Source: Auanema rhodensis (Eukaryota > Animalia > Nematoda). From it: DNA of 64,000 nt. The notes beneath the pieces were generated by a model. It saw nothing but the letters and a program-made list of their open reading frames with translations, did not search any database and was not told the origin of the DNA. The stretch covers positions 22,692,001-22,756,000 of the forward strand of contig OZ059896.1 in the NCBI GenBank assembly GCA_964057225.1, in the 5' to 3' direction. Shown in pieces: positions 25,716 through 64,000 of the stretch; within the stretch, counting starts at the first letter, position 1, and each line of letters opens with the position of its first letter. Both the position numbers and the translations under genes were made by a program.

Positions 25716-25719
25716 TAAA

Positions 25720-37064: not shown

Positions 37065-39187
37065 CCCATATTAGTCTAAAAACAAATTTTTATTGATATT
37101 GGTTCATGGTAACCATGACTTTGAAATTTACGTGAACTTTAATTTATGCTAATTAAATGTACACGTGATGTGCACTTGGTATGTAACTCGCTTCACGTGA
37201 AAGATAAAGAGATGCGGTTTTCAAAATTAGATTCCCCATGTCCATATTAGTCTAAAAACAAATTTTTATTGATATTGGTTCATGGTAACCATGACTTTGA
37301 AATTTACGTGAACTTTAATTTATGCTAATTAAATGTACACGTGATGTGCACTTGGTATGTAACTCGCTTCACGTGAAAGATAAAGAGATGCGGTTTTCAA
37401 AATTAGATTCCCCATGTCCATATTAGTATAAAAACAAATTTTTATTAATATTGGTTCATGGTAACCATGACTTTGAAATTTACGTGAACTTTAATTTATG
37501 CTAATTAAATGTACACGTGATGTGCACTTGGTATGTAACTCGCTTCACGTGAAAGATAAAGAGATGCGGTTTTCAAAATTAGATTCCCCATGTCCATATT
37601 AGTCTAAAAACAAATTTTTATTGATATTGGTTCATGGTAACCATGACTTTGAAATTTACGTGAACTTTAATTTATGCTAATTAAATGTACACGTGATGTG
37701 CACTTGGTATGTAACTCGCTTCACGTGAAAGATAAAGAGATGCGGTTTTCAAAATTAGATTCCCCATGTCCATATTAGTCTAAAAACAAATTTTTATTAA
37801 TATTGGTTCATGGTAACCATGTCTTTGAAATTTACGTGAACTTTAATTTATGCTAATTAAATGTACACGTGATGTGCACTTGGTATGTAACTCGCTTCAC
37901 GTGAAAGAGAAAGAGATGCGGTTTTCAAAATTAGATTCCCCATGTCCATATTAGTCTAAAAACAAATCTTTATTGATATTGGTTCATGGTAACCATGACT
38001 TTGAAATTTACGTGAACTTTAATTTATGCTAATTAAATGTACACGTGATGTGCACTTGGTATGTAACTCGCTTCACGTGAAAGATAAAGAGATGCGGTTT
38101 TCAAAATTAGATTCCCCATGTCCATATTAGTCTAAAAACAAATTTTTATTGATATTGGTTCATGGTAACCATGACTTTGAAATTTACGTGAACTTTAATT
38201 TATGCTAATTAAATGTACACGTGATGTGCACTTGGTATGTAACTCGCTTCACGTGAAAGATAAAGAGATGCGGTTTTCAAAATTAGATTCCCCATGTCCA
38301 TATTAGTCTAAAAACAAATTTTTATTAATATTGGTTCATGGTAACCATGTCTTTGAAATTTACGTGAACTTTAATTTATGCTAATTAAATGTACACGTGA
38401 TGTGCACTTGGTATGTAACTCGCTTCACGTGAAAGATAAAGAGATGCGGTTTTCAAATTAGATTCCCCATGTCCATATTAGTCTAAAAACAAATTTTTAT
38501 TGATATTGGTTCATGGTAACCATGACTTTGAAATTTACGTGAACTTTAATTTATGCTAATTAAATGTACACGTGATGTGCACTTGGTATGTAACTCGCTT
38601 CACGTGAAAGATAAAGAGATGCGGTTTTCAAAATTAGATTCCCCATGTCCATATTAGTCTAAAAACAAATTTTTATTAATATTGGTTCATGGTAACCATG
38701 TCTTTGAAATTTACGTGAACTTTAATTTATGCTAATTAAATGTACACGTGATGTGCACTTGGTATGTAACTCGCTTCACGTGAAAGATAAAGAGATGCGG
38801 TTTTCAAAATTAGATTCCCCATGCCCATATTAGTCTAAAAACAAATTTTTATTGATATTGGTTCATGGTAACCATGACTTTGAAATTTACGTGAACTTTA
38901 ATTTATGCTAATTAAATGTACACGTGATGTGCACTTGGTATGTAACTCGCTTCACGTGAAAGATAAAGAGATGCGGTTTTCAAAATTAGATTCCCCATGT
39001 CCATATTAGTCTAAAAACAAATTTTTATTGATATTGGTTCATGGTAACCATGACTTTGAAATTTACGTGAACTTTAATTTATGCTAATTAAATGTACACG
39101 TGATGTGCACTTGGTATGTAACTCGCTTCACGTGAAAGATAAAGAGATGCGGTTTTCAAAATTAGATTCCCCATGTCCATATTAGTA
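37065..39187. repeat. 10-monomer-spaced duplication in array B
   Basis: CATGCCC at 37065/38824 and AGTATAA at 37428/39187 are both 1759 bp apart (10x176 minus a 1-bp deletion near 38455). Confidence 0.85.
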
Positions 39188-42100: not shown

Positions 42101-43036
42101 ACTTGGTATGTAACTCGCTTCACGTGAAAGATAAAGAGATGCGGTTTTCAAAATTAGATTCCCCATGTCCATATTAGTCTAAAAACAAATTTTTATTAAT
42201 ATTGGTTCATGGTAACCATGTCTTTGAAATTTACGTGAACTTTAATTTATGCTAATTAAATGTACACGTGATGTGCTCTTGGTATGTAACTCGCTTCACG
42301 TGAAAGATAAAGAGATGCGGTTTTCAAAATTAGATTCCCCATGTCCATATTAGTCTAAAAACAAATTTTTATTGATATTGGTTCATGGTAACCATGACTT
42401 TGAAATTTACGTGAACTTTAATTTATGCTAATTAAATGTACACGTGATGTGCACTTGGTATGTAACTCGCTTCACGTGAAAGATAAAGAGATGCGGTTTT
42501 CAAAATTAGATTCCCCATGTCCATATTAGTCTAAAAACAAATTTTTATTAATATTGGTTCATGGTAACCATGTCTTTGAAATTTACGTGAACTTTAATTT
42601 ATGCTAATTAAATGTACACGTGATGTGCACTTGGTATGTAACTCGCTTCACGTGAAAGATAAAGAGATGCGGTTTTCAAAATTAGATTCCCCATGTCCAT
42701 ATTAGTCTAAAAACAAATTTTTATTAATATTGGTTCATGGTAACCATGTCTTTGAAATTTACGTGAACTTTAATTTATGCTAATTAAATGTACACGTGAT
42801 GTGCACTTGGTATGTAACTCGCTTCACGTGAAAGATAAAGAGATGCGGTTTTCAAAATTAGATTCCCCATGTCCATATTAGTCTAAAAACAAATTTTTAT
42901 TAATATTGGTTCATGGTAACCATGTCTTTGAAATTTACGTGAACTTTAATTTATGCTAATTAAATGTACACGTGATGTGCACTTGGTATGTAACTCGCTT
43001 CACGTGAAAGATAAAGAGATGCGGTTTTCAAAATTA

Positions 43037-46000
43037 AATTCCCCATGTCCATATTAGTCTAAAAACAAATTTTTATTGATATTGGTTCATGGTAACCATG
43101 ACTTTGAAATTTACGTGAACTTTAATTTATGCTAATTAAATGTACACGTGATGTGCACTTGGTATGTAACTCGCTTCACGTGAAAGATAAAGAGATGCGG
43201 TTTTCAAAATTAGATTCCCCATGTCCATATTAGTCTAAAAACAACTTTTTATTAATATTGGTTCATGGTAACCATGTCTTTGAAATTTACGTGAACTTTA
43301 ATTTATGCTAATTAAATGTACACGTGATGTGCACTTGGTATGTAACTCGCTTCACGTGAAAGATAAAGAGATGCGGTTTTCAAAATTAGATTCCCCATGT
43401 CCATATTAGTCTAAAAACAAATTTTTATTAATATTGGTTCATGGTAACCATGTCTTTGAAATTTACGTGAACTTTAATTTATGCTAATTAAATGTACACG
43501 TGATGTGCACTTGGTATGTAACTCGCTTCACGTGAAAGATAAAGAGATGCGGTTTTCAAAATTAGATTCCCCATGTCCATATTAGTCTAAAAACAAATTT
43601 TTATTAATATTGGTTCATGGTAACCATGTCTTTGAAATTTACGTGAACTTTAATTTATGCTAATTAAATGTACACGTGATGTGCACTTGGTATGTAACTC
43701 GCTTCACGTGAAAGATAAAGAGATGCGGTTTTCAAAATTAAATTCCCCATGTCCATATTAGTCTAAAAACAAATTTTTATTGATATTGGTTCATGGTAAC
43801 CATGACTTTGAAATTTACGTGAACTTTAATTTATGCTAATTAAATGTACACGTGATGTGCACTTGGTATGTAACTCGCTTCACGTGAAAGATAAAGAGAT
43901 GCGGTTTTCAAAATTAGATTCCCCATGTCCATATTAGTCTAAAAACAACTTTTTATTAATATTGGTTCATGGTAACCATGTCTTTGAAATTTACGTGAAC
44001 TTTAATTTATGCTAATTAAATGTACACGTGATGTGCACTTGGTATGTAACTCGCTTCACGTGAAAGATAAAGAGATGCGGTTTTCAAAATTAGATTCCCC
44101 ATGTCCATATTAGTCTAAAAACAAATTTTTATTAATATTGGTTCATGGTAACCATGTCTTTGAAATTTACGTGAACTTTAATTTATGCTAATTAAATGTA
44201 CACGTGATGTGCACTTGGTATGTAACTCGCTTTACGTGAAAGATAAAGAGATGCGGTTTTCAAAATTAAATTCCCCATGTCCATATTAGTCTAAAAACAA
44301 ATTTTTATTGATATTGGTTCATGGTAACCATGACTTTGAAATTTACGTGAACTTTAATTTATGCTAATTAAATGTACACGTGATGTGCACTTGGTATGTA
44401 ACTCGCTTCACGTGAAAGATAAAGAGATGCGGTTTTCAAAATTAGATTCCCCATGTCCATATTAGTCTAAAAACAAATTTTTATTGATATTGGTTCATGG
44501 TAACCATGACTTTGAAATTTACGTGAACTTTAATTTATGCTAATTAAATGTACACGTGATGTGCACTTGGTATGTAACTCGCTTCACGTGAAAGATAAAG
44601 AGATGCGGTTTTCAAAATTAGATTCCCCATGTCCATATTAGTCTAAAAACAAATTTTTATTGATATTGCTTCATGGTAACCATGACTTTGAAATTTACGT
44701 GAACTTTAATTTATGCTAATTAAATGTACACGTGATGTGCACTTGGTATGTAACTCGCTTCACGTGAAAGATAAAGAGATGCGGTTTTCAAAATTAAATT
44801 CCCCATGTCCATATTAGTCTAAAAACAAATTTTTATTGATATTGGTTCATGGTAACCATGACTTTGAAATTTACGTGAACTTTAATTTATGCTAATTAAA
44901 TGTACACGTGATGTGCACTTGGTATGTAACTCGCTTCACGTGAAAGATAAAGAGATGCGGTTTTCAAAATTAGATTCCCCATGTCCATATTAGTCTAAAA
45001 ACAAATTTTTATTAATATTGGTTCATGGTAACCATGTCTTTGAAATTTACGTGAACTTTAATTTATGCTAATTAAATGTACACGTGATGTGCACTTGGTA
45101 TGTAACTCGCTTCACGTGAAAGATAAAGAGATGCGGTTTTCAAAATTAGATTCCCCATGTCCATATTAGTCTAAAAACAAATTTTTATTAATATTGGTTC
45201 ATGGTAACCGTGTCTTTGAAATTTACGTGAACTTTAATTTATGCTAATTAAATGTACACGTGATGTGCACTTGGTATGTAACTCGCTTCACGTGAAAGAT
45301 AAAGAGATGCGGTTTTCAAAATTAAATTCCCCATGTCCATATTAGTCTAAAAACAAATTTTTATTGATATTGGTTCATGGTAACCATGACTTTGAAATTT
45401 ACGTGAACTTTAATTTATGCTAATTAAATGTACACGTGATGTGCACTTGGTATGTAACTCGCTTCACGTGAAAGATAAAGAGATGCGGTTTTCAAAATTA
45501 GATTCCCCATGTCCATATTAGTCTAAAAACAAATTTTTATTAATATTGGTTCATGGTAACCATGTCTTTGAAATTTACGTGAACTTTAATTTATGCTAAT
45601 TAAATGTACACGTGATGTGCACTTGGTATGTAACTCGCTTCACGTGAAAGATAAAGAGATGCGGTTTTCAAAATTAGATTCCCCATGTCCATATTAGTCT
45701 AAAAACAAATTTTTATTAATATTGGTTCATGGTAACCATGTCTTTGAAATTTACGTGAACTTTAATTTATGCTAATTAAATGTACACGTGATGTGCACTT
45801 GGTATGTAACTCGCTTCACGTGAAAGATAAAGAGATGCGGTTTTCAAAATTAAATTCCCCATGTCCATATTAGTCTAAAAACAAATTTTTATTGATATTG
45901 GTTCATGGTAACCATGACTTTGAAATTTACGTGAACTTTAATTTATGCTAATTAAATATACACGTGATGTGCACTTGGTATGTAACTCGCTTCACGTGAA

Positions 46001-47700
46001 AGATAAAGAGATGCGGTTTTCAAAATTAGATTCTTCATGTCCATATTAGTCTAAAAACAAATTTTTATTAATATTGGTTCATGGTAACCATGTCTTTGAA
46101 ATTTACGTGAACTTTAATTTATGCTAATTAAATGTACACGTGATGTGCACTTGGTATGTAACTCGCTTCACGTGAAAGATAAAGAGATGCGGTTTTCAAA
46201 ATTAGATTCCCCATGTCCATATTAGTCTAAAAACAAATTTTTATTAATATTGGTTCATGGTAACCATGTCTTTGAAATTTACGTGAACTTTAATTTATGC
46301 TAATTAAATGTACACGTGATGAGCACTTGGTATGTAACTCGCTTCACGTGAAAGATAAAGAGATGCGGTTTTCAAAATTAGATTCCCCATGTCTATATTA
46401 GTCTAAAAACAAATTTTTATTGATATTGGTTCATGGTAACCATGACTTTGAAATTTACGTGAACTTTAATTTATGCTAATTAAATGTACACGTGATGTGC
46501 ACTTGGTATGTAACTCGCTTCACGTGAAAGATAAAGAGATGCGGTTTTCAAAATTAGATTCCCCATGTCCATATTAGTCTAAAAACAAATTTTTATTGAT
46601 ATTGGTTCATGGTAACCATGACTTTGAAATTTACGTGAACTTTAATTTATGCTAATTAAATGTACACGTGATGTGCACTTGGTATGTAACTCGCTTCACG
46701 TGAAAGATAAAGAGATGCGGTTTTCAAAATTAGATTCCCCATGTCCATATTAGTCTAAAAACAAATTTTTATTAATATTGGTTCATGGTAACCATGTCTT
46801 TGAAATTTACGTGAACTTTAATTTATGCTAATTAAATGTACACGTGATGTGCACTTGGTATGTAACTCGCTTCACGTGAAAGATAAAGAGATGCGGTTTT
46901 CAAAATTAGATTCCCCATGTCCATATTAGTCTAAAAACAAATTTTTATTAATATTGGTTCATGGTAACCATGTCTTTGAAATTTACGTGAACTTTAATTT
47001 ATGCTAATTAAATGTACACGTGATGTGCACTTGGTATGTAACTCGCTTCACGTGAAAGATAAAGAGATGCGGTTTTCAAAATTAAATTCCCCATGTCCAT
47101 ATTAGTCTAAAAACAAATTTTTATTGATATTGGTTCATGGTAACCATGACTTTGAAATTTACGTGAACTTTAATTTATGCTAATTAAATATACACGTGAT
47201 GTGCACTTGGTATGTAACTCGCTTCACGTGAAAGATAAAGAGATGCGGTTTTCAAAATTAGATTCTTCATGTCCATATTAGTCTAAAAACAAATTTTTAT
47301 TAATATTGGTTCATGGTAACCATGTCTTTGAAATTTACGTGAACTTTAATTTATGCTAATTAAATGTACACGTGATGTGCACTTGGTATGTAACTCGCTT
47401 CACGTGAAAGATAAAGAGATGCGGTTTTCAAAATTAGATTCCCCATGTCCATATTAGTCTAAAAACAAATTTTTATTAATATTGGTTCATGGTAACCATG
47501 TCTTTGAAATTTACGTGAACTTTAATTTATGCTAATTAAATGTACACGTGATGAGCACTTGGTATGTAACTCGCTTCACGTGAAAGATAAAGAGATGCGG
47601 TTTTCAAAATTAGATTCCCCATGTCTATATTAGTCTAAAAACAAATTTTTATTGATATTGGTTCATGGTAACCATGACTTTGAAATTTACGTGAACTTTA
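43037..47700. repeat. 4-mer, 3-mer and 7-mer higher-order periodicity in array B
   Basis: The ATTAAATTCC allele occurs at 43037, 43741, 44269, 44797, 45325, 45853 and 47085 (spacings 704, 4x528, 1232). AAATATA at 45958/47190 and GAGCAC at 46322/47554 are 1232 bp (7x176) apart. Confidence 0.88.
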
Positions 47701-50344
47701 ATTTATGCTAATTAAATGTACACGTGATGTGCACTTGGTATGTAACTCGCTTCACGTGAAAGATAAAGAGATGCGGTTTTCAAAATTAGATTCCCCATGT
47801 CCATATTAGTCTAAAAACAAATTTTTATTAATATTGGTTCATGGTAACCATGACTTTGAAATTTACGTGAACTTTAATTTATGCTAATTAAATGTACACG
47901 TGATGTGCACTTGGTATGTAACTCGCTTCACGTGAAAGATAAAGAGATGCGGTTTTCAAAATTAGATTCCCCATGTCCATATTAGTCTAAAAACAAATTT
48001 TTATTAATATTGGTTCATGGTAACCATGTCTTTGAAATTTACGTGAACTTTAATTTATGCTAATTAAATGTACACGTGATGTGCACTTGGTATGTAACTC
48101 GCTTCACGTGAAAGATAAAGAGATGCGGTTTTCAAAATTAGATTCCCCATGTCCATATTAGTCTAAAAACAAATTTGTATTAATATTGGTTCATGGTAAC
48201 CATGTCTTTGAAATTTACGTGAACTTTAATTTATGCTAATTAAATGTACACGTGATGTGCACTTGGTATGTAACTCGCTTCACGTGAAAGATAAAGAGAT
48301 GCGGTTTTCAAAATTAGATTCCCCATGTCCATATTAGTCTAAAAACAAATTTTTATTAATATTGGTTCATGGTAACCATGTCTTTGAAATTTACGTGAAC
48401 TTTAATTTATGCTAATTAAATGTACACGTGATGTGCACTTGGTATGTAACTCGCTTCACGTGAAAGATAAAGAGATGCGGTTTTCAAAATTAGATTCCCC
48501 ATGTCCATATTAGTATAAAAACAAATTTTTATTAATATTGGTTCATGGTAACCATGTCTTTGAAATTTACGTGAACTTTAATTTATGCTAATTAAATGTA
48601 CACGTGATGTGCACTTGGTATGTAACTCGCTTCACGTGAAAGATAAAGAGATGCGGTTTTCAAAATTAGATTCCCCATGTCCATATTAGTCTAAAAACAA
48701 ATTTTTATTAATATTGGTTCATGGTAACCATGTCTTTGAAATTTACGTGAACTTTAATTTATGCTAATTAAATGTACACGTGATGTGCACTTGGTATGTA
48801 ACTCGCTTCACGTGAAAGATAAAGAGATGCGGTTTTCAAAATTAGATTCCCCATGTCCATATTAGTCTAAAAACAAATTTTTATTAATATTGGTTCATGG
48901 TAACCATGTCTTTGAAATTTACGTGAACTTTAATTTATGCTAATTAAATGTACACGTGATGTGCACTTGGTATGTAACTCGCTTCACGTGAAAGATAAAG
49001 AGATGCGGTTTTCAAAATTAGATTCCCCATGTCCATATTAGTCTAAAAACAAATTTTTATTGATATTGATTCATGGTAACCATGACTTTGAAATTTACGT
49101 GAACTTTAATTTATGCTAATTAAATGTACACGTGATGTGCACTTGGTATGTAACTCGCTTCACGTGAAAGATAAAGAGATGCGGTTTTCAAAATTAGATT
49201 CCCCATGTCCATATTAGTCTAAAAACAAATTTTTATTAATATTGGTTCATGGTAACCATGTCTTTGAAATTTACGTGAACTTTAATTTATGCTAATTAAA
49301 TGTACACGTGATGTGCACTTGGTATGTAACTCGCTTCATGTAAAAGATAAAGAGATGCGGTCTTCAAAATTAGATTCCCCATGTCCATATTAGTCTAAAA
49401 ACAAATTATTATTGATATTGGTTCATGGTAACCATGATTTTGAAATTTACGTGAACTTTAATTTATGCTAATTAAATGTACACGTGATGTGCACTTGGTA
49501 TGTAACTCGCTTCATGTAAAAGATAAAGAGATGCGGTCTTCAAAATTAGATTCCCCATGTCCATATTAGTCTAAAAACAAATTTTTATTGATATTGGTTC
49601 ATGGTAACCATGTCTTTGAAATTTACGTGAACTTTAATTTATGCTAATTAAATGTACACGTGATGTGCACTTGGTATGTAACTCGCTTCACGTGAAAGAT
49701 AAAGAGATGCGGTTTTCAAAATTAGATTCCCCATGTCCATATTAGTCTAAAAACAAATTTTTATTAATATTGGTTCATGGTAACCATGTCTTTGAAATTT
49801 ACGTGAACTTTAATTTATGCTAATTAAATGTACACGTGATGTGCACTTGGTATGTAACTCGCTTCACGTAAAAGATAAAGAGATGCGGTCTTCAAAATTA
49901 GATTCCCCATGTCCATATTAGTCTAAAAACAAATTTTTATTGATATTGGTTCATGGTAACCATGATTTTGAAATTTACGTGAACTTTAATTTATGCTAAT
50001 TAAATGTACACGTGATGTGCACTTGGTATGTAACTCGCTTCACGTGAAAGATAAAGAGATGCGGTTTTCAAAATTAGATTCCCCATGTCCATATTAGTCT
50101 AAAAACAAATTTTTATTAATATTGGTTCATGGTAACCATGTCTTTGAAATTTACGTGAACTTTAATTTATGCTAATTAAATGTACACGTGATGTGCACTT
50201 GGTATGTAACTCGCTTCACGTGAAAGATAAAGAGATGCGGTTTTCAAAATTAGATTCCCCATGTCCATATTAGTCTAAAAACAAATTTTTATTAATATTG
50301 GTTCATGGTAACCATGTCTTTGAAATTTACGTGAACTTTAATTT

Positions 50345-50501
50345 ATGCTAATTAAATGTACACGTGATGTGCACTTGGTATGTAACTCGCTTCACGTGAA
50401 AGATAAAGAGATGCGGTTTTCAAAATTAGATTCCCCATGTCATTTTTATTGATATTGGTTCATGGTAACCATGTTTTTGAAATTTACGTGAACTTTAATT
50501 T
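50345..50501. repeat. 157-bp monomer carrying a unique 19-bp deletion
   Basis: CATGTC|ATTTTTATT at 50441-50442 lacks CATATTAGTCTAAAAACAA; the next monomer starts 157 bp later. Confidence 0.95.
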
Positions 50502-53500
50502 ATGCTAATTAAATGTACACGTGATGTGCACTTGGTATGTAACTCGCTTCACGTGAAAGATAAAGAGATGCGGTTTTCAAAATTAGATTCCCCATGTCCA
50601 TATTAGTCTAAAAACAAATTTCTATTGATATTGGTTTATGGTAACCATGTCTTTGAAATTTACGTGAACTTTAATTTATGCTAATTAAATGTACACGTGA
50701 TGTGCACTTGGTATGTAACTCGCTTCACGTGAAAAATAAAAAGATGCGGTTTTCAAAATTAGATTCCCCATGTCCATATTAGTCTAAAAACAAATTTTTA
50801 TTAATATTGGTTCATGGTAACCATGTCTTTGAAATTTACGTGAACTTTAATTTATGCTAATTAAATGTACACGTGATGTGCACTTGGTATGTAACTCGCT
50901 TCACGTGAAAGATAAAAAGATGCAGTTTTCAAAATTAGATTCCCCATGTCCATATTAGTCTAAAAACAAATTTTTATTGATATTGGTTCATGGTAACCAT
51001 GTCTTTGAAATTTACGTGAACTTTAATTTATGCTAATTAAATCTACACGTGATGTGCACTTGGTATGTAACTCGCTTCACGTGAAAAATAAAGAGATGCG
51101 GTTTCCAAAATTAGATTCCCCATGTCCATATTAGTCTAAAAACAAATTTTTATTAATATTGGTTCATGGTAACCATGACTTTGAAATTTACGTGAACTTT
51201 AATTTATGCTAATTAAATGTACACGTGATGTGCTCTTGGTATGTAACTCGCTTCACGTGAAAGATAAAGAGATGCGGTTTTCAAAATTAGATTCCCCATG
51301 TCCATTTTAGTCTAAAAACAAATTTTTATTGATATTGGTTTATGGTAACCATATCTTTGAAATTTACGTGAACTTTAATTTATGCTAATTAAATGTACAC
51401 GTGATGTGCACTTGGTATGTAACTCGCTTCACGTGAAAAATAAAAAGATGCGGTTTTCAAAATTAGATTCCCCATGTCCATATTAGTCTAAAAACAAATT
51501 TTTATTAATATTGGTTCATGGTAACCATGTCTTTGAAATTTACGTGAACTTTAATTTATGCTAATTAAATGTACACGTGATGTGCACTTGGTATGTAACT
51601 CGCTTCACGTGAAAGATAAAAAGATGCAGTTTTCAAAATTAGATTCCCCATGTCCATATTAGTCTAAAAACAAATTTTTATTGATATTGGTTCATGGTAA
51701 CCATGTCTTTGAAATTTACGTGAACTTTAATTTATGCTAATTAAATCTACACGTGATGTGCACTTGGTATGTAACTCGCTTCACGTGAAAAATAAAGAGA
51801 TGCGGTTTCCAAAATTAGATTCCCCATGTCCATATTAGTCTAAAAACAAATTTTTATTAATATTGGTTCATGGTAACCATGACTTTGAAATTTACGTGAA
51901 CTTTAATTTATGCTAATTAAATGTACACGTGATGTGCACTTGGTATGTAACTCGCTTCACGTGAAAGATAAAGAGATGCGGTTTTCAAAATTAGATTCCC
52001 CATGTCCATATTAGTCTAAAAACAAATTTTTATTAATATTGGTTCATGGTAACCATGACTTTGAAATTTACGTGAACTTTAATTTATGCTAATTAAATCT
52101 ACACGTGATGTGCACTTGGTATGTAACTCGCTTCACGTGAAAAATAAAAAGATGCGGTTTTCAAAATTAGATTCCCCATGTCCATATTAGTCTAAAAACA
52201 AATTTTTATTAATATTGGTTCATGGTAACCATGTCTTTGAAATTTACGTGAACTTTAATTTATGCTAATTAAATGTACACGTGATGTGCACTTGGTATGT
52301 AACTCGCTTCACGTGAAAGATAAAGAGATGCGGTTTTCAAAATTAGATTCCCCATGTCCATATTAGTCTAAAAACAAATTTTTATTAATATTGGTTCATG
52401 GTAACCATGTCTTTGAAATTTACGTGAACTTTAATTTATGCTAATTAAATGTACACGTGATGTGCTCTTGGTATGTAACTCGCTTCACGTGAAAAATAAA
52501 AAGATGCGGTTTTCAAAATTAGATTCCCCATGTCCATATTAGTCTAAAAACAAATTTTTATTGATATTGGTTCATGGTAACCATGTCTTTGAAATTTACG
52601 TGAACTTTAATTTATGCTAATTAAATCTACACGTGATGTGCACTTGGTATGTAACTCGCTTCACGTGAAAAATAAAAAGATGCGGTTTTCAAAATTAGAT
52701 TCCCCATGTCCATATTAGTCTAAAAACAAATTTTTATTAATATTGGTTCATGGTAACCATGACTTTGAAATTTACGTGAACTTTAATTTATGCTAATTAA
52801 ATGTACACGTGATGTGCACTTGGTATGTAACTCGCTTCACGTGAAAGATAAAGAGATGCGGTTTTCAAAATTAGATTCCCCATGTCCATATTAGTCTAAA
52901 AACAAATTTTTATTGATATTGGTTCATGGTAACCATGACTTTGAAATTTACGTGAACTTTAATTTATGCTAATTAAATGTACACGTGATGTGCACTTGGT
53001 ATGTAACTCGCTTCACGTGAAAGATAAAGAGATGCGGTTTTCAAAATTAGATTCCCCATGTCCATATTAGTCTAAAAACAAATTTTTATTGATATTGGTT
53101 CATGGTAACCATGACTTTGAAATTTACGTGAACTTTAATTTATGCTAATTAAATGTACACGTGATGTGCACTTGGTATGTAACTCGCTTCACGTGAAAGA
53201 TAAAGAGATGCGGTTTTCAAAATTAGATTCCCCATGTCCATATTAGTCTAAAAACAAATTTTTATTAATATTGGTTCATGGTAACCATGTCTTTGAAATT
53301 TACGTGAACTTTAATTTATGCTAATTAAATGTACACGTGATGTGCTCTTGGTATGTAACTCGCTTCACGTGAAAGATAAAGAGATGCGGTTTTCAAAATT
53401 AGATTCCCCATGTCCATTTTAGTCTAAAAACAAATTTTTATTGATATTGGTTTATGGTAACCATATCTTTGAAATTTACGTGAACTTTAATTTATGCTAA

Positions 53501-56500
53501 TTAAATGTACACGTGATGTGCACTTGGTATGTAACTCGCTTCACGTGAAAGATAAAGAGATGCGGTTTTCAAAATTAGATTCCCCATGTCCATATTAGTC
53601 TAAAAACAAATTTTTATTGATATTGGTTCATGGTAACCATGTTTTTGAAATTTACGTGAACTTTAATTTATGCTAATTAAATGTACACGTGATGTGCACT
53701 TGGTATGTAACTCGCTTCACGTGAAAGATAAAGAGATGCGGTTTTCAAAATTAGATTCCCCATGTCCATATTAGTCTAAAAACAAATTTCTATTGATATT
53801 GGTTTATGGTAACCATGTCTTTGAAATTTACGTGAACTTTAATTTATGCTAATTAAATGTACACGTGATGTGCACTTGGTATGTAACTCGCTTCACGTGA
53901 AAAATAAAAAGATGCGGTTTTCAAAATTAGATTCCCCATGTCCATATTAGTCTAAAAACAAATTTTTATTAATATTGGTTCATGGTAACCATGTCTTTGA
54001 AATTTACGTGAACTTTAATTTATGCTAATTAAATGTACACGTGATGTGCACTTGGTATGTAACTCGCTTCACGTGAAAGATAAAAAGATGCAGTTTTCAA
54101 AATTAGATTCCCCATGTCCATATTAGTCTAAAAACAAATTTTTATTGATATTGGTTCATGGTAACCATGTCTTTGAAATTTACGTGAACTTTAATTTATG
54201 CTAATTAAATCTACACGTGATGTGCACTTGGTATGTAACTCGCTTCACGTGAAAAATAAAGAGATGCGGTTTCCAAAATTAGATTCCCCATGTCCATATT
54301 AGTCTAAAAACAAATTTTTATTAATATTGGTTCATGGTAACCATGACTTTGAAATTTACGTGAACTTTAATTTATGCTAATTAAATGTACACGTGATGTG
54401 CACTTGGTATGTAACTCGCTTCACGTGAAAGATAAAGAGATGCGGTTTTCAAAATTAGATTCCCCATGTCCATATTAGTCTAAAAACAAATTTTTATTAA
54501 TATTGGTTCATGGTAACCATGTCTTTGAAATTTACGTGAACTTTAATTTATGCTAATTAAATGTACACGTGATGTGCACTTGGTATGTAACTCGCTTCAC
54601 GTGAAAGATAAAGAGATGCGGTTTTCAAAATTAGATTCCCCATGTCCATATTAGTCTAAAAACAAATTTTTATTAATATTGGTTCATGGTAACCATGTCT
54701 TTGAAATTTACGTGAACTTTAATTTATGCTAATTAAATGTACACGTGATGTGCTCTTGGTATGTAACTCGCTTCACGTGAAAAATAAAAAGATGCGGTTT
54801 TCAAAATTAGATTCCCCATGTCCATATTAGTCTAAAAACAAATTTTTATTGATATTGGTTCATGGTAACCATGTCTTTGAAATTTACGTGAACTTTAATT
54901 TATGCTAATTAAATCTACACGTGATGTGCACTTGGTATGTAACTCGCTTCACGTGAAAAATAAAAAGATGCGGTTTTCAAAATTAGATTCCCCATGTCCA
55001 TATTAGTCTAAAAACAAATTTTTATTAATATTGGTTCATGGTAACCATGACTTTGAAATTTACGTGAACTTTAATTTATGCTAATTAAATGTACACGTGA
55101 TGTGCACTTGGTATGTAACTCGCTTCACGTGAAAGATAAAGAGATGCGGTTTTCAAAATTAGATTCCCCATGTCCATATTAGTCTAAAAACAAATTTTTA
55201 TTGATATTGGTTCATGGTAACCATGACTTTGAAATTTACGTGAACTTTAATTTATGCTAATTAAATGTACACGTGATGTGCACTTGGTATGTAACTCGCT
55301 TCACGTGAAAGATAAAGAGATGCGGTTTTCAAAATTAGATTCCCCATGTCCATATTAGTCTAAAAACAAATTTTTATTGATATTGGTTCATGGTAACCAT
55401 GACTTTGAAATTTACGTGAACTTTAATTTATGCTAATTAAATGTACACGTGATGTGCACTTGGTATGTAACTCGCTTCACGTGAAAGATAAAGAGATGCG
55501 GTTTTTAAAATTAGATTCCCCATGTCCATATTAGTCTAAAAACAAATTTTTATTAATATTGGTTCATGGTAACCATGTCTTTGAAATTTACGTGAACTTT
55601 AATTTATGCTAATTAAATGTACACGTGATGTGCTCTTGGTATGTAACTCGCTTCACGTGAAAGATAAAGAGATGCGGTTTTCAAAATTAGATTCCCCATG
55701 TCCATTTTAGTCTAAAAACAAATTTTTATTGATATTGGTTTATGGTAACCATATCTTTGAAATTTACGTGAACTTTAATTTATGCTAATTAAATGTACAC
55801 GTGATGTGCACTTGGTATGTAACTCGCTTCACGTGAAAGATAAAGAGATGCGGTTTTCAAAATTAGATTCCCCATGTCCATATTAGTCTAAAAACAAATT
55901 TTTATTGATATTGGTTCATGGTAACCATGTTTTTGAAATTTACGTGAACTTTAATTTATGCTAATTAAATGTACACGTGATGTGCACTTGGTATGTAACT
56001 CGCTTCACGTGAAAAATAAAGAGATGCGGTTTTCAAAATTAGATTCCCCATGTCCATATTAGTCTAAAAACAAATTTTTATTGATATTGGTTCATGGTAA
56101 CCATGACTTTGAAATTTACGTGAACTTTAATTTATGCTAATTAAATGTACACGTGATGTGCACTTGGTATGTAACTCGCTTCACGTGAAAGATAAAGAGA
56201 TGCGGTTTTCAAAATTAGATTCCCCATGTCCATATTAGTCTAAAAACAAATTTCTATTGATATTGGTTTATGGTAACCATGTCTTTGAAATTTACGTGAA
56301 CTTTAATTTATGCTAATTAAATGTACACGTGATGTGCACTTGGTATGTAACTCGCTTCACGTGAAAAATAAAAAGATGCGGTTTTCAAAATTAGATTCCC
56401 CATGTCCATATTAGTCTAAAAACAAATTTTTATTAATATTGGTTCATGGTAACCATGTCTTTGAAATTTACGTGAACTTTAATTTATGCTAATTAAATGT

Positions 56501-57000
56501 ACACGTGATGTGCACTTGGTATGTAACTCGCTTCACGTGAAAGATAAAAAGATGCAGTTTTCAAAATTAGATTCCCCATGTCCATATTAGTCTAAAAACA
56601 AATTTTTATTGATATTGGTTCATGGTAACCATGTCTTTGAAATTTACGTGAACTTTAATTTATGCTAATTAAATCTACACGTGATGTGCACTTGGTATGT
56701 AACTCGCTTCACGTGAAAAATAAAGAGATGCGGTTTCCAAAATTAGATTCCCCATGTCCATATTAGTCTAAAAACAAATTTTTATTAATATTGGTTCATG
56801 GTAACCATGACTTTGAAATTTACGTGAACTTTAATTTATGCTAATTAAATGTACACGTGATGTGCACTTGGTATGTAACTCGCTTCACGTGAAAGATAAA
56901 GAGATGCGGTTTTCAAAATTAGATTCCCCATGTCCATATTAGTCTAAAAACAAATTTTTATTAATATTGGTTCATGGTAACCATGACTTTGAAATTTACG
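50502..57000. repeat. 13/14-monomer block duplications in distal array B
   Basis: The GGTTTCC allele occurs at 51105, 51809, 54273 and 56737 (spacings 704, 2464, 2464). TGCTCT with AAAATAAAAAG at 52466/54754 and ATGTTTTTG at 53639/55927 are 2288 bp (13x176) apart. Confidence 0.85.
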
Positions 57001-60000
57001 TGAACTTTAATTTATGCTAATTAAATCTACACGTGATGTGCACTTGGTATGTAACTCGCTTCACGTGAAAGATAAAGAGATGCGGTTTTCAAAATTAGAT
57101 TCCCCATGTCCATATTAGTCTAAAAACAAATTTTTATTAATATTGGTTCATGGTAACCATGACTTTGAAATTTACGTGAACTTTAATTTATGCTAATTAA
57201 ATGTACACGTGATGTGCACTTGGTATGTAACTCGCTTCACGTGAAAGATAAAGAGATGCGGTTTTTAAAATTAGATTCCCCATGTCCATATTAGTCTAAA
57301 AACAAATTTCTATTGATATTGGTTTATGGTAACCATATCTTTGAAATTTACGTGAACTTTAATTTATGCTAATTAAATGTACACGTGATGTGCACTTGGT
57401 ATGTAACTCGCTTCACGTGAAAGATAAAGAGATGCGGTTTTCAAAATTAGATTCCCCATGTCCATATTAGTCTAAAAACAAATTTTTATTGATATTGGTT
57501 CATGGTAACCATGTCTTTGAAATTTACGTGAACTTTAATTTATGCTAATTAAATGTACACGTGATGTGCACTTGGTATGTAACTCGCTTCACGTGAAAGA
57601 TAAAAAGATGCAGTTTTCAAAATTAGATTCCCCATGTCCATATTAGTCTAAAAACAAATTTTTATTGATATTGGTTCATGGTAACCATGTCTTTGAAATT
57701 TACGTGAACTTTAATTTATGCTAATTAAATCTACACGTGATGTGCACTTGGTATGTAACTCGCTTCACGTGAAAAATAAAGAGATGCGGTTTTCAAAATT
57801 AGATTCCCCATGTCCATATTAGTCTAAAAACAAATTTTTATTAATATTGGTTCATGGTAACCATGACTTTGAAATTTACGTGAACTTTAATTTATGCTAA
57901 TTAAATCTACACGTGATGTGCACTTGGTATGTAACTCGCTTCACGTGAAAAATAAAGAGATGCGGTTTTCAAAATTAGATTCCCCATGTCCATATTAGTC
58001 TAAAAACAAATTTTTATTAATATTGGTTCATGGTAACCATGACTTTGAAATTTACGTGAACTTTAATTTATGCTAATTAAATGTACACGTGATGTGCACT
58101 TGGTATGTAACTCGCTTCACGTGAAAGATAAAGAGATGTGGTTTTCAAAATTAGATTCCCCATGTCCATATTAGTCTAAAAACAAATTTTTATTAATATT
58201 GGTTCATGGTAACCATGACTTTGAAATTTACGTGAACTTTAATTTATGCTAATTAAATGTACACGTGATGTGCACTTGGTATGTAACTCGCTTCACGTGG
58301 AAGATAAAAAGATACAGTTTTCAAAATTAGATTCCCCATGTCCATATTAGTCTAAAAACAAATTTTTATTGATATTGGTTCATGGTAACCATGACTTTGA
58401 AATTTACGTGAACTTTAATTTATGCTAATTAAATGTACACGTGATGTGCACTTGGTATGTAACTCGCTTCACGTGAAAGATAAAGAGATGCGGTTTTCAA
58501 AAGTAGATTCCCCATGTCCATATTAGTCTAAAAACAAATTTTTATTGATATTGGTGCATGGTAACCATGACTTTGAAATTTACGTGAACTTTAATTTATG
58601 CTAATTAAATGTACACGTGATGTGCACTTGGTATGTAACTCGCTTCACGTGAAAGATAAAGAGATGCGGTTTTCAAAATTAGATTCCCCATGTCCATATT
58701 AGTCTAGAAACAAATTTCTATTGATATTGGTTCATGGTAACCATATCTTTGAAATTTACGTGAACTTTAATTTATGCTAATTAAATGTACACGTGATGTG
58801 CACTTGGTATGTAACTCGCTTCACGTGAAAGATAAAGAGATGCGGTTTTCAAAATTAGATTCCCCATGTCCATATTAGTCTAGAAACAAATTTCTATTGA
58901 TATTGGTTTATGGTAACCATATCTTTGAAATTTACGTGAACTTTAATTTATGCTAATTAAATGTACACGTGATGTGCACTTGGTATGTAACTCGCTTCAC
59001 GTGAAAGATAAAAAGATGCAGTTTTCAAAATTAGATTCCCCATGTCCATATTAGTCTAAAAACAAATTTTTATTGATATTGGTTCATGGTAACCATGACT
59101 TTGAAATTTACGTGAACTTTAATTTATGCTAATTAAATGTACACGTGATGTGCACTTGGTATGTAACTCGCTTGAAAGATAAAGAGATGCGGTTTTCAAA
59201 ATTAGATTCCCCATGTCCATATTAGTCTAAAAACAAATTTTTATTGATATTGGTTCATGGTAACCATGACTTTGAAATTTACGTGAACTTTAATTTATGC
59301 TAATTAAATTTACACGTGATGTGCACTTGGTATGTAACTCGCTTCACGTGAAAGATAAAGAGATGCGGTTTTCAAAATTAGATTCCCCATGTCCATATTA
59401 GTCTAAAAACAAATTTTTATTGATATTGGTTCATGGTAACCATGACTTTGAAATTTACGTGAACTTTAATTTATGCTAATTAAATGTACACGTGATGTGC
59501 ACTTGGTATGTAACTCGCTTCACGTGAAAGATAAAGAGATGCGGTTTTCAAAATTAGATTCCCCATGTCCATATTAGTCTAAAAACAAATTTTTATTAAT
59601 ATTGGTTCATGGTAACCATGTCTTTGAAATTTACGTGATCTTTAATTTATGCTAATTAAATGTACACGTGATGTGCACTTGGTATGTAACTCGCTTCACG
59701 TGAAAGATAAAGAGATGCGGTTTTCAAAATTAGATTTCCCATGTCCATATTAGTCTAGAAACAAATTTCTATTGATATTGGTTTATGGTAACCATATCTT
59801 TGAAATTTACGTGAACTTTAATTTATGCTAATTAAATGTACACGTGATGTGCACTTGGTATGTAACTCGCTTCACGTGAAAGATAAAGAGATGCGGTTTT
59901 CAAAATTAGATTCCCCATGTCCATATTAGTCTAGAAACAAATTTCTATTGATATTGGTTTATGGTAACCATATCTTTGAAATTTACGTGAACTTTAATTT

Positions 60001-63000
60001 ATGCTAATTAAATGTACACGTGATGTGCACTTGGTATGTAACTCGCTTCACGTAAAAGATAAAAAGATGCAGTTTTCAAAATTAGATTCCCCATGTCCAT
60101 ATTAGTCTAAAAACAAATTTTTATTGATATTGGTTCATGGTAACCATGACTTTGAAATTTACGTGATCTTTAATTTATGCTAATTAAATGTACACGTGAT
60201 GTGCACTTGGTATGTAACTCGCTTCACGTGAAAGATAAAGAGATGCGGTTTTCAAAATTAGATTCCCCATGTCCATATTAGTCTAGAAACAAATTTCTAT
60301 TGATATTGGTTTATGGTAACCATATCTTTGAAATTTACGTGAACTTTAATTTATGCTAATTAAATGTACACGTGATGTGCACTTGGTATGTAACTCGCTT
60401 CACGTGAAAGATAAAGAGATGCGGTTTTCAAAATTAGATTCCCCATGTCCATATTAGTCTAGAAACAAATTTCTATTGATATTGGTTTATGGTAACCATT
60501 TCTTTGAAATTTACGTGAACTTTAATTTATGCTAATTAAATGTACACGTGATGTGCACTTGGTATGTAACTCGCTTCACGTGAAAGATAAAAAGATGCAG
60601 TTTTCAAAATTAGATTCCCCATGTCCATATTAGTCTAAAAACAAATTTTTATTGATATTGGTTCATGGTAACCATGACTTTGAAATTTACGTGAACTTTA
60701 ATTTATGCTAATTAAATGTACACGTGATGTGCACTTGGTATGTAACTCGCTTCACGTGAAAGATAAAGAGATGCGGTTTTCAAAAGTAGATTCCCCATGT
60801 CCATATTAGTCTAAAAACAAATTTTTATTGATATTGGTGCATGGTAACCATGACTTTGAAATTTACGTGAACTTTAATTTATGCTAATTAAATGTACACG
60901 TGATGTGCACTTGGTATGTAACTCGCTTCACGTGAAAGATAAAGAGATGCGGTTTTCAAAATTAGATTCCCCATGTCCATATTAGTCTAGAAACAAATTT
61001 CTATTGATATTGGTTTATGGTAACCATATCTTTGAAATTTACGTGAACTTTAATTTATGCTAATTAAATGTACACGTGATGTGCACTTGGTATGTAACTC
61101 GCTTCACGTGAAAGATAAAGAGATGCGGTTTTCAAAATTAGATTCCCCATGTCCATATTAGTCTAAAAACAAATTTTTATTGATATTGGTTGATGGTAAC
61201 CATGTCTTTGAAATTTACGTGAACTTTAATTTATGCTAATTAAATGTACACGTGATGTGCACTTGGTATGTAACTCGCTTCACGTGAAAGATAAAGAGAT
61301 GCGGTTTTCAAAAGTAGATTCCCCATGTCCATATTAGTCTAAAAACAAATTTTTATTGATATTGGTGCATGGTAACCATGACTTTGAAATTTACGTGAAC
61401 TTTAATTTATGCTAATTAAATGTACACGTGATGTGCACTTGGTATGTAACTCGCTTCACGTGAAAGATAAAGAGATGCGGTTTTCAAAATTAGATTCCCC
61501 ATGTCCATATTAGTCTAGAAACAAATTTCTATTGATATTGGTTTATGGTAACCATATCTTTGAAATTTACGTGAACTTTAATTTATGCTAATTAAATGTA
61601 CACGTGATGTGCACTTGGTATGTAACTCGCTTCACGTGAAAGATAAAGAGATGCGGTTTTCAAAATTAGATTCCCCATGTCCATATTAGTCTAAAAACAA
61701 ATTTTTATTGATATTGGTTCATGGTAACCATGTCTTTGAAATTTACGTGAACTTTAATTTATGCTAATTAAATGTACACGTGATGTGCACTTGGTATGTA
61801 ACTCGCTTCACGTGAAAAATAAAGAGATGCGCTTTTCAAAATTAGATTCCCCATGTCCATATTAGTCTAAAAACAAATTTTTATTAATATTGGTTCATGG
61901 TAACCATGTCTTTGAAATTTACGTGAACTTTAATTTATGCTAATTAAATGTACACGTGATGTGCACTTGGTATGTAACTCGCTTGAAAGATAAAGAGATG
62001 CGGTTTTCAAAATTAGATTCCCCATGTCCATATTAGTCTAAAAACAAATTTTTATTGATATTGGTTCATGGTAACCATGACTTTGAAATTTACGTGAACT
62101 TTAATTTATGCTAATTAAATGTACACGTGATGTGCACTTGGTATGTAACTCGCTTCACGTGAAAGATAAAGAGATGCGGTTTTCAAAATTAGATTCCCCA
62201 TGTCCATATTAGTCTAAAAACAAAATTTTATTGATATTGGTTCATGGTAACCATGACTTTGAAATTTACGTGAACTTTAATTTATGCTAATTAAATGTAC
62301 ACGTGATGTGCACTTGGTATGTAACTCGCTTCACGTGAAAGATAAAGAGATGCGGTTTTCAAAATTAGATTCCCCATGTCCATATTAGTCTAAAAACAAA
62401 TTTCTATTGATATTGGTTTATGGTAACCATGTCTTTGAAATTTACGTGAACTTTAATTTATGCTAATTAAATGTTCACGTGATGTGCACTTGGTATGTAA
62501 CTCGCTTCACGTGAAAGATAAAGAGATGCGGTTTTCAAAATTAGATTCCCCATGTCCATATTAGTCTAAAAACAAATTTTTATTAATATTGGTTCATGGT
62601 AACCATGTCTTTGAAATTTACGTGAACTTTAATTTATGCTAATTAAATGTACACGTGATGTGCACTTGGTATGTAACTCGCTTCACGTGAAAGATAAAAA
62701 GATGCAGTTTTCAAAATTAGATTCCCCATGTCCATATTAGTCTAAAAACAAATTTTTATTGATATTGGTTCATGGTAACCATGTCTTTGAAATTTACGTG
62801 AACTTTAATTTATGCTAATTAAATCTACACGTGATGTGCACTTGGTATGTAACTCGCTTCACGTGAAAAATAAAAAGATGCGGTTTTCAAAATTAGATTC
62901 CCCATGTCCATATTAGTCTAAAAACAAATTTTTATTAATATTGGTTCATGGTAACCATGACTTTGAAATTTACGTGAACTTTAATTTATGCTAATTAAAT

Positions 63001-64000
63001 GTACACGTGATGTGCACTTGGTTTGTAACTCGCTTCACGTGAAAGATAAAGAGATGCGGTTTTCAAAATTAGATTCCCCATGTCCATATTAGTCTAAAAA
63101 CAAATTTTTATTGATATTGGTTCATGGTAACCATGACTTTGAAATTTACGTGAACTTTAATTTATGCTAATTAAATGTACACGTGATGTGCACTTGGTAT
63201 GTAACTCGCTTCACGTGAAAGATAAAGAGATGCGGTTTTCAAAATTAGATTCCCCATGTCCATATTAGTCTAAAAACAAATTTTTATTGATATTGGTTCA
63301 TGGTAACCATGACTTTGAAATTTACGTGAACTTTAATTTATGCTAATTAAATGTACACGTGATGTGCACTTGGTATGTAACTCGCTTCACGTGAAAGATA
63401 AAGAGATGCGGTTTTTAAAATTAGATTCCCCATGTCCATATTAGTCTAAAAACAAATTTTTATTAATATTGGTTCATGGTAACCATGTCTTTGAAATTTA
63501 CGTGAACTTTAATTTATGCTAATTAAATGTACACGTGATGTGCACTTGGTATGTAACTCGCTTCACGTGAAAGATAAAGAGATGCGGTTTTCAAAATTAG
63601 ATTCCCCATGTCCATATTAGTCTAAAAACAAATTTTTATTGATATTGGTTCATGGTAACCATGTTTTTGAAATTTACGTGAACTTTAATTTATGCTAATT
63701 AAATGTACACGTGATGTGCACTTGGTATGTAACTCGCTTCACGTGAAAAATAAAGAGATGCGGTTTTCAAAATTAGATTCCCCATGTCCATATTAGTCTA
63801 AAAACAAATTTTTATTGATATTGGTTCATGGTAACCATGACTTTGAAATTTACGTGAACTTTAATTTATGCTAATTAAATGTACACGTGATGTGCACTTG
63901 GTATGTAACTCGCTTCACGTGAAAGATAAAGAGATGCGGTTTTCAAAATTAGATTCCCCATGTCCATATTAGTCTAAAAACAAATTTCTATTGATATTGG

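What the first reader, a model, noticed from the sequence alone, without database searches (positions are those of the whole stretch)
50615..64000. Compensatory base-pair swap in the TAAAAA-caaa-TTTTTA hairpin of the 176-bp satellite
Seen: a T>C change in the right arm (TTTCTA) occurs alone at about 50622, 53790, 56254, 57310, 62404 and 63988. An A>G change in the left arm (TAGAAA) occurs in 8 monomers (about 58707, 58883, 59758, 59934, 60286, 60462, 60990, 61518), always together with TTTCTA. This restores a perfect TAGAAA-caaa-TTTCTA stem (A:T becomes G:C), with the unpaired intermediate still visible in the array. Inference: either template-switch correction of a quasi-palindrome, or selection for a cruciform or RNA stem, followed by amplification. 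Caveat: the 8 copies probably descend from one event.
Basis: partly seen in the sequence, partly recalled or inferred. Interest (0 to 1): 0.78.

Follow-up and report, generated by a model that had tools for sequence, protein, structure and literature searches.

The report
Hairpin base-pair swap in worm satellite
The paired A>G / T>C change in a small hairpin of this roundworm's 176-letter repeat is real, but it traces to one or two mutations copied many times by block duplication, and genome-wide counts give only weak evidence that anything is actively preserving the hairpin.

Summary
In the window there are 8 monomers with TAGAAA-caaa-TTTCTA, 6 with only TTTCTA and none with only TAGAAA.

The repeat is the published germline-restricted AT-1 satellite of the nematode Auanema rhodense (not human). 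It has about 122,000 copies, roughly 12% of the genome.

All 8 double-change copies share one haplotype (105G 116C 131T 143A). That lineage reaches 58 copies in this C4 array, spread by multi-monomer block duplication. A second, probably independent origin (5-6 copies) lies on C1.

The same lineage carries a second compensated pair (131T:143A) in the adjacent palindrome. That double change has a single origin, against 671 and 338 uncompensated singles.

Against a context-matched null, compensated dyad pairs are about 4-fold enriched (4/248 vs 16/3,959). P is 0.027, or 0.10 without the discovery pair.

Several results point away from a preserved stem:
- Two other pairs of the same stem show no compensated doubles.
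- No loop inversion exists.
- A non-compensating double (103C+116C) reached 40 copies.
- Stem positions are not less variable than the rest of the monomer.
- The stems are thermodynamically weak.

The most likely explanation is neutral mutation and recombination plus amplification. Occasional template switching is not excluded.

First-stage readers noted the same two swaps in this window and in two neighbouring windows of this array. None of those notes was followed up.

The parts
25705..64000 (+). 176-bp satellite array, the AT-1 germline-restricted repeat of Auanema rhodense. 217 monomers lie in the window, and the array continues beyond the window's end.
   Evidence: TRF. The published 28-nt AT-1 FISH probe matches 189 monomers exactly (probe from bioRxiv 10.64898/2026.08.27.747507).
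58705..58720 (+). Hairpin 1 with both changes (TAGAAA-caaa-TTTCTA). This copy's haplotype is 105G 116C 143A; it lacks 131T and is probably a recombinant.
58881..58896 (+). Hairpin 1 with both changes, on haplotype 105G 116C 131T 143A.
59756..59771 (+). Hairpin 1 with both changes; same haplotype plus 84T.
59932..59947 (+). Hairpin 1 with both changes; same haplotype.
60284..60299 (+). Hairpin 1 with both changes; same haplotype.
60460..60475 (+). Hairpin 1 with both changes; this copy has 143T instead of 143A.
60988..61003 (+). Hairpin 1 with both changes; same haplotype.
61516..61531 (+). Hairpin 1 with both changes; same haplotype.
50609..50624 (+). Hairpin 1 with T>C only, on haplotype 116C 131T (both dyads mismatched). 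Further copies of this haplotype lie at 53777-53792, 56241-56256, 62391-62406 and 63975-63990.
57297..57312 (+). Hairpin 1 with T>C only, on haplotype 72T 116C 131T 143A. This is the closest background to the double-change lineage, lacking only 105G.
58909..58921 (+). Second dyad in its compensated form TATGGTaACCATA (131C>T and 143G>A) on a double-change monomer. The consensus is CATGGTaACCATG.
51341..51353 (+). Second dyad compensated (131T 143A) on a different background (24T 96T) with hairpin 1 unchanged. Further copies lie at 53453-53465 and 55741-55753.

Best explanation
The pattern is ordinary satellite-array evolution. It occurs in the AT-1 176-bp repeat of Auanema rhodense, which the worm discards from its body cells. 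Point mutations arose on single monomers: 116T>C and 131C>T first, then 143G>A, then 105A>G. Crossing-over and gene conversion between neighbouring monomers reshuffled them. Tandem duplication of multi-monomer blocks then copied whichever variants lay in the duplicated blocks, whether or not their stems were intact. The 105A>G change happened to land opposite an existing 116C, once in the C4 array and probably once more in a diverged C1 array. Its present abundance reflects block amplification, not any benefit of the restored pair.

Shown: the counts, the shared haplotype, the block duplication, the reticulated haplotype network, the abundance of uncompensated and non-compensating variants, and the lack of constraint on stem positions.

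Inferred: the order of mutations, the independence of the C1 origin, and the neutrality of the change.
For: - One lineage: all 8 window doubles, and 57 of 61 doubles in the extended C4 sample, carry 105G 116C 131T 143A.
- Amplification: an identical run of 29 monomers (5,104 bp) holding 4 doubles is repeated in tandem, and spacings of 176, 1,056, 1,584, 3,168 and 5,104 bp between doubles recur.
- Reticulation: all four combinations of 116 and 143 occur on 131T, and 59A/66A appear on many backgrounds.
- The hairpin is not protected genome-wide: 287 A>G-alone copies in about 30 or more clusters among the first 100 listed, and on at least 6 haplotype backgrounds in 8 loci. There are 279 T>C-alone copies, 671 with 131T alone and 338 with 143A alone.
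- Broken versions amplify equally well: [116C 131T], with both dyads mismatched, has 43 copies in the C4 sample. The non-compensating 103C+116C has 40 copies in one C1 cluster.
- In C1, 104G (96 copies) and 117C (64 copies), which would pair, co-occur only 5 times against 19 expected.
- There are no compensated doubles at pairs 106:115 or 107:114 in the whole genome.
- Stem positions are not less variable than others (Mann-Whitney p = 0.20 and 0.84), and only 30% of C1 monomers keep hairpin 1 fully paired.
- The structure is weak: the unchanged two-dyad segment folds at -5.3 kcal/mol as DNA, z = -1.4.
Against: - Four derived changes on one lineage form two compensating pairs in two adjacent dyads. 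In the C4 sample, 2 of 47 real dyad pairs carry linked complementary derived alleles, against 3 of 913 context-matched pseudo-pairs (Fisher 0.021).
- A further tightly linked compensating pair, 133A:141T (two transversions), and a second origin of 105G:116C appear in C1.
- Pooled over three arrays the enrichment is about 4-fold, P = 0.027.
- At the level of events, two A>G origins on the 0.28% of copies that carry 116C give P = 0.003-0.027, depending on how many origins the 287 singles represent.
- These numbers rest on four events, one of which was the discovery itself.
Confidence: 0.6

Rival explanations
1. Template-switch (quasi-palindrome) correction. After a first mutation makes a short inverted repeat imperfect, a brief strand switch during replication copies the mutated arm into the other arm. 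This produces the complementary change at a rate well above ordinary point mutation. The corrected monomers are then amplified neutrally.
For: - The new bases are exactly those the opposite arm would template, in two adjacent dyads of one lineage, with a second origin on C1 and a transversion pair 133A:141T.
- Enrichment over context-matched pseudo-pairs is about 4-fold, P = 0.027. The event-level test gives P = 0.003-0.027.
- The mechanism is established in bacteria, yeast and humans, and has been proposed for compensatory changes in hairpins (PMC5453318, PMC8794818, PMC3820800).
- It needs no selection, which fits the lack of constraint.
Against: - Only single-base changes are seen, so there is no diagnostic multi-base signature.
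- Loop inversion occurs in 0 of about 122,000 copies.
- There are no compensated doubles at pairs 106:115 and 107:114. Pooling the three tested pairs of the stem gives P = 0.03-0.17.
- Without the discovery pair the pooled enrichment is P = 0.10.
- More than 1,500 uncorrected mismatched copies persist.
- Arms of 6 bp are short for known quasi-palindrome hotspots (my own knowledge).
- 143G>A also fits a competing dyad (T123:A143), so reading it as a correction of 131:143 is ambiguous.
- The authors of PMC8794818 themselves call the evidence for this role in short stems circumstantial.
Confidence: 0.28
2. Selection keeps the dyads intact because they act as a cruciform, an RNA stem or a symmetric protein-binding site in the germline, for example in meiotic pairing. 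Compensated monomers are then favoured.
For: - Compensated pairs occur in two adjacent dyads.
- The double-double haplotype folds best of the four natural haplotypes (DNA -6.2 kcal/mol, z = -2.5).
- Short dyad symmetries are enriched in the centromeric satellites of many eukaryotes (PMC5889037).
- The preprint speculates that some repeat blocks might act like pairing centres.
Against: - Stem sites show no reduced variability.
- Uncompensated variants outnumber compensated ones about 9:1 in both dyads.
- The both-dyads-broken haplotype and the non-compensating 103C+116C amplified to about 40 copies each.
- The potentially pairing variants 104G and 117C are in repulsion.
- The unchanged stems are no more stable than shuffles, and there is no Rfam match.
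- Selection on a single monomer among 122,000 copies would be extremely weak (inference).
- The satellite palindromes are not the elimination motif: only 15 high-scoring SFE matches exist in all eliminated DNA.
Confidence: 0.06
3. The variants are assembly or sequencing artefacts of a highly repetitive region.
For: Long satellite arrays are hard to assemble, and collapsed or mis-joined blocks could mimic duplication.
Against: - The variants are substitutions that recur in regular multi-monomer patterns. They are linked to other variants in consistent haplotypes over 130 kb and on two chromosomes.
- The assembly is reported as PacBio HiFi plus Hi-C.
Confidence: 0.02

Closest known systems
AT-1 autosomal-terminal eliminated tandem repeat of Auanema rhodense (bioRxiv 10.64898/2026.08.27.747507)
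   Same: The published 28-nt AT-1 FISH probe matches 189 monomers of the window exactly. The genome size (181 Mb), the terminal position on a 23.6-Mb contig and the repeat-unit range all fit.
   Different: The preprint's main text has no occurrence of 'hairpin', and its uses of 'palindromic' refer to the elimination motif. In what I read it does not describe monomer variants, internal dyads or compensated changes.
Template-switch / quasi-palindrome mutations (Ripley model; PMC5453318, PMC8794818, PMC3820800)
   Same: A mismatch in a short inverted repeat is followed by exactly the change the other arm would template, which makes the repeat perfect again.
   Different: Only one base per event, no loop inversion, no adjacent parallel changes, 6-bp arms, and statistical support resting on four events.
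Short dyad symmetries in satellite DNA (non-B-form DNA at centromeres, PMC5889037)
   Same: An AT-rich satellite monomer holding several dyads shorter than 10 bp.
   Different: Nematodes of this group are holocentric (my own knowledge). This repeat is subterminal and discarded from the soma, and I found no constraint on its dyads.
Higher-order-repeat and block amplification of variant monomers in satellite arrays (unequal exchange)
   Same: Variant monomers recur at fixed multi-monomer spacings, and identical 29-monomer blocks lie in tandem.
   Different: Nothing material; this is the ordinary behaviour of such arrays.

Membership tests
AT-1 satellite of Auanema rhodense | Sequence contains the published AT-1 FISH probe | tested here: met
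   189 exact matches in the window, 0 in shuffles; probe sequence.
AT-1 satellite of Auanema rhodense | Large terminal blocks on the autosomes of a genome of about 180 Mb with 7 chromosomes | tested here: met
   The window lies at C4:22.69 Mb of a 23.58-Mb contig. G000 is 181 Mb. About 122,000 copies lie on many contigs, near contig ends and internally.
AT-1 satellite of Auanema rhodense | Eliminated from somatic nuclei from the 12-cell stage | not testable with these tools
   Reported by FISH in the preprint.
Template-switch / quasi-palindrome correction | A pre-existing imperfect inverted repeat, with the new base identical to what the other arm templates | tested here: met
   116C precedes 105G on the haplotype network. 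The same holds for 131T/143A and 133A/141T.
Template-switch / quasi-palindrome correction | A multi-base or parallel signature (adjacent co-changes, loop inversion) | tested here: not met
   The inverted loop TTTG occurs 0 times in the genome. Each event is a single base.
Template-switch / quasi-palindrome correction | Excess of arm-templated changes over a context-matched null | tested here: inconclusive
   4/248 real dyad pairs vs 16/3,959 pseudo-pairs, P = 0.027, or 0.10 without the discovery pair. No doubles at two other pairs of the stem.
Structure under selection (functional stem with covariation) | Stem positions less variable than unpaired positions | tested here: not met
   Mann-Whitney p = 0.20 (C4) and 0.84 (C1). 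Hairpin 1 is among the most variable parts of the monomer in C1.
Structure under selection (functional stem with covariation) | Uncompensated mismatches rare relative to compensated pairs | tested here: not met
   566 singles vs 63 doubles, and 1,009 singles vs 107 doubles.
Structure under selection (functional stem with covariation) | Folding stability beyond shuffled sequence | tested here: not met
   Unchanged segment z = -1.4 as DNA and -0.3 as RNA.
Known structured RNA family (Rfam) | Match to a covariance model | tested here: not met
   No match at E <= 1 in window 57000-61000.

The most novel reading that the evidence does not exclude
Short template switches during germline replication repeatedly 'repair' mismatched mini-palindromes in a satellite that is under little or no selection because it is discarded from the soma. 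If so, this 21-Mb array would be a natural record of the rate and spectrum of quasi-palindrome correction in an animal germline. The two compensated dyads on one lineage would be its first visible events.
Probability: 0.25. Interest if true: 0.45.

Novelty: already known. Interest (0 to 1): 0.2.

Why it matters
If the compensated pairs were produced by a directed process, this very large and apparently unconstrained array would give a clean way to measure template-switch mutation in an animal germline. It would also caution against reading covariation as proof of function.

As it stands, the main value is the opposite lesson. In tandem arrays, one or two chance events copied by block duplication can look like strong covariation (63 copies observed against 1 expected). 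Only counts of independent origins, compared with context-matched controls, are meaningful.

Tried and rejected
The general test therefore rests on 920 C4 monomers, 323 C1 monomers and 64 monomers of the 351-bp satellite.
- A link between the 13-bp palindrome and the elimination motif (SFE). The motif's sequence is only in a figure, and the paper reports just 15 high-scoring matches in all eliminated DNA. That is incompatible with a 122,000-copy satellite site. Rejected.
- Known RNA families: none found.
- The compensated pair 104G:117C in C1: rejected as evidence, because the two common variants are in repulsion (5 observed, 19 expected).
- The neighbouring 351-bp satellite as a replicate: 0 of 154 dyad pairs compensated, with low power.
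- A tree-based covariation test and the count of structure pairs were not run. The haplotype network is reticulated (four-gamete violations), so a tree would mislead, and the alignment would have needed more than a hundred typed references. Permutation and pseudo-pair nulls were used instead.
It was re-run with the consensus derived from the data.
Full report
WHAT THE REGION IS

The whole window is satellite DNA. A 351-bp repeat covers 1-25706 and a 176-bp repeat covers 25705-64000, both at about 31% G+C.

Earlier scan notes named the nematode Auanema rhodense, and I tested this. The preprint bioRxiv 10.64898/2026.08.27.747507 describes a 180-Mb germline genome of 7 chromosomes whose multi-megabase tandem-repeat blocks are lost from somatic cells at the 12-cell stage. 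Its 28-nt FISH probe for the autosomal-terminal eliminated repeat AT-1 matches 189 monomers of the window exactly, against none in shuffles.

The window lies at C4:22,692,001-22,756,000 of a 23.58-Mb contig in a 181-Mb assembly. The 176-bp satellite is therefore AT-1 of A. rhodense, and the contig is not human. The unchanged hairpin 22-mer occurs 122,060 times. That is about 21 Mb, or roughly 12% of the genome.

THE OBSERVATION

Cutting the array into monomers gives 217 hairpin sites:

| Hairpin state | Copies in window |
|---|---|
| TAAAAA-caaa-TTTTTA (unchanged) | 177 |
| TAGAAA-caaa-TTTCTA (both changed) | 8 |
| TTTCTA only | 6 |
| TAGAAA only | 0 |

The remaining 26 sites carry other variants. 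In my monomer frame the changes are 105A>G and 116T>C, and these two positions pair in a 6-bp stem with a 4-nt loop.

ONE LINEAGE, AMPLIFIED

- All eight doubles share a haplotype: 105G 116C 131T 143A, with minor derivatives.
- The T>C-only copies are 116C 131T.
- One copy (monomer starting at 57194) is 72T 116C 131T 143A, the closest background lacking only 105G.

I fetched the next 130 kb of the array. Over the 194 kb examined (window plus the fetched 130 kb), the lineage has 61 doubles among 920 monomers. An identical run of 29 monomers (5,104 bp) holding four doubles is repeated in tandem, and spacings between doubles recur at fixed multiples of 176 bp.

The haplotype network is reticulated. 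All four combinations of 116 and 143 occur on 131T, and variants such as 59A/66A sit on many backgrounds. Recombination between monomers is therefore frequent, and 'intermediates' may be recombinants as well as mutational steps.

A SECOND COMPENSATED PAIR

Positions 131 and 143 are the outer pair of the adjacent 13-bp palindrome CATGGTaACCATG. On this lineage 131C>T and 143G>A turn C:G into T:A. All four derived changes of the lineage thus form two compensating pairs in two neighbouring dyads.

One caution: 143G>A equally improves a competing dyad (GATAT.TGGTT / AACCATATC, where T123:G143 becomes T:A). The fold prefers that dyad in some haplotypes.

GENOME-WIDE COUNTS

| Pair | Unchanged | Left change only | Right change only | Both |
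|---|---|---|---|---|
| 105:116 | 122,060 | 287 (A>G) | 279 (T>C) | 63 |
| 131:143 | not counted | 671 (131T) | 338 (143A) | 107 |

For pair 105:116:
- The A>G-only copies fall into about 30 or more separate clusters among the first 100 listed places, on six contigs.
- Eight sampled loci on C1 show at least six different backgrounds.
- The doubles lie in only two places: 58 in this C4 array and 5 on C1 at 18.08-18.10 Mb.

The C1 copies belong to a diverged subfamily with 7 fixed differences. They carry 20T 22A 74T 140G, lack 131T/143A, and keep the C1-diagnostic bases within 15 bp on either side of the hairpin. I infer from this a second, independent A>G on a local 116C background.

For pair 131:143, all 107 doubles lie in this one C4 cluster, so the double has a single origin.

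IS COMPENSATION MORE THAN CHANCE?

Per copy, yes: 63 observed against about 1 expected. But copies are not events.

Event-level test on the focal pair. Copies carrying 116C are 0.28% of all copies. Two A>G origins on that background give P = 0.003-0.027, for 30-90 origins elsewhere.

Unbiased test over all 47 dyad pairs of the monomer. I counted position pairs carrying linked, complementary derived alleles, and compared them with pseudo-pairs of the same spacing and complementary consensus bases.

| Array | Real dyad pairs hit | Pseudo-pairs hit | Fisher P |
|---|---|---|---|
| C4 (176 bp) | 2/47 | 3/913 | 0.021 |
| C1 (176 bp; pairs 105G:116C and 133A:141T) | 2/47 | 12/913 | 0.15 |
| 351-bp satellite | 0/154 | 1/2,133 | not computed |
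| Pooled | 4/248 | 16/3,959 | 0.027 |

The pooled odds ratio is 4.0. Without the pair that prompted the finding, P is 0.10.

Evidence against a general process:
- Compensated double transitions at two other pairs of the same stem (106:115 and 107:114) are absent from the whole genome. Pooling the three tested pairs of the stem gives P = 0.03-0.17.
- In C1 the common variants 104G (96 copies) and 117C (64 copies), which would pair, co-occur only 5 times against 19 expected.
- On 116C backgrounds the left arm also acquired 103C, 104G and 105C.
- The non-compensating double 103C+116C reached 40 copies in one cluster, the same order as the compensating double.

The statistical case is suggestive but rests on four events.

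IS THE STEM CONSTRAINED OR STABLE?

No.
- Stem positions are as variable as other positions (Mann-Whitney p = 0.20 in C4 and 0.84 in C1).
- In C1 only 30% of monomers keep hairpin 1 fully paired, and it is among the most variable parts of the monomer there.
- The both-dyads-mismatched haplotype [116C 131T] has 43 copies in the C4 sample.
- As single-stranded DNA, the unchanged two-dyad segment folds at -5.3 kcal/mol (z = -1.4). The mismatched forms fold at about -3.7, and the double-double form at -6.2 (z = -2.5). As RNA the unchanged form has z = -0.3.
- Rfam has no match.
- Six-base-pair A:T stems are short for cruciform extrusion (my own knowledge).
- The palindromes are not the elimination motif. 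The preprint finds only 15 strong SFE matches in all eliminated DNA.

MECHANISM

Most likely (about 0.6) is neutral point mutation and inter-monomer recombination, followed by block amplification. The complementary changes would then be coincidences made conspicuous by copying.

The main rival (about 0.28) is template-switch correction of quasi-palindromes. It is a known mechanism (PMC5453318, PMC3820800) and has been proposed to create compensatory changes in hairpins, although its authors call the evidence for that role in short stems circumstantial (PMC8794818). It fits the two compensated dyads on one lineage, the C1 recurrence and the transversion pair, and it needs no selection. But its diagnostic side-signatures are missing: loop inversion occurs in 0 of about 122,000 copies, and there are no multi-base changes.

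Selection for a cruciform, an RNA stem or a symmetric binding site (about 0.06) is contradicted by the lack of constraint.

LIMITS

The number of independent origins among the single changes is estimated from clusters in partial listings. No tree-based test was run, because the network is reticulated.

VERDICT

The satellite and its amplification behaviour are known kinds of things. The compensatory reading is not established, and selection on the stem is unlikely. A low-rate templated correction remains an open, testable possibility.

Noticed in passing
window 50430-50445: One monomer lacks 19 bp (spacing 333 instead of 352), which removes the left arm and loop of hairpin 1. TRF splits the array here. 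The part before it (25.7-50.4 kb) has no 116C at all and is a fairly regular 352-bp dimer in which 121A and 144A monomers alternate.
   Followed up: partly
window 25705-64000, monomer positions 130 and 144: The common 144T>A variant (about half of monomers) extends the 13-bp palindrome by one pair, to TCATGGTaACCATGA. 130T>G, fixed in the C1 subfamily, removes that pair again.
   Followed up: no
window 58873-58928 (monomer positions 121-145): Overlapping, competing dyads: GATAT.TGGTT / AACCATATC competes with CATGGTaACCATG. 143G>A improves both, so its assignment to pair 131:143 is not unique.
   Followed up: partly
L030-L036 (G000:C1:18030001-18100000, minus strand): An internal C1 array is a diverged AT-1 subfamily, with 7 fixed differences and about 11 differences per monomer from the C4 consensus. 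Its diversity is high: 103C is in 33% of monomers, 104G in 30%, and 116C and 117C in 20% each.
   Followed up: partly
L025-L026 (about G000:C4:22835375-22845600): Two tandem, base-identical copies of a 29-monomer (5,104-bp) block, which implies a very recent segmental duplication inside the array.
   Followed up: partly
window 59125-59300 and 61936-62111: Two monomers of 171 bp (a 5-bp deletion) recur about 16 monomers apart, another marker of block duplication.
   Followed up: no
window 25690-25715: An abrupt junction between the 351-bp and 176-bp satellites, with the GC skew changing sign there.
   Followed up: no
G000 contig C2: The partial listings (first 100 places each, sorted by contig) of AT-1 variant hits run from C1 to C3 and beyond with no place on C2. 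This fits the preprint's statement that the X chromosome carries different repeats from the autosomes.
   Followed up: no
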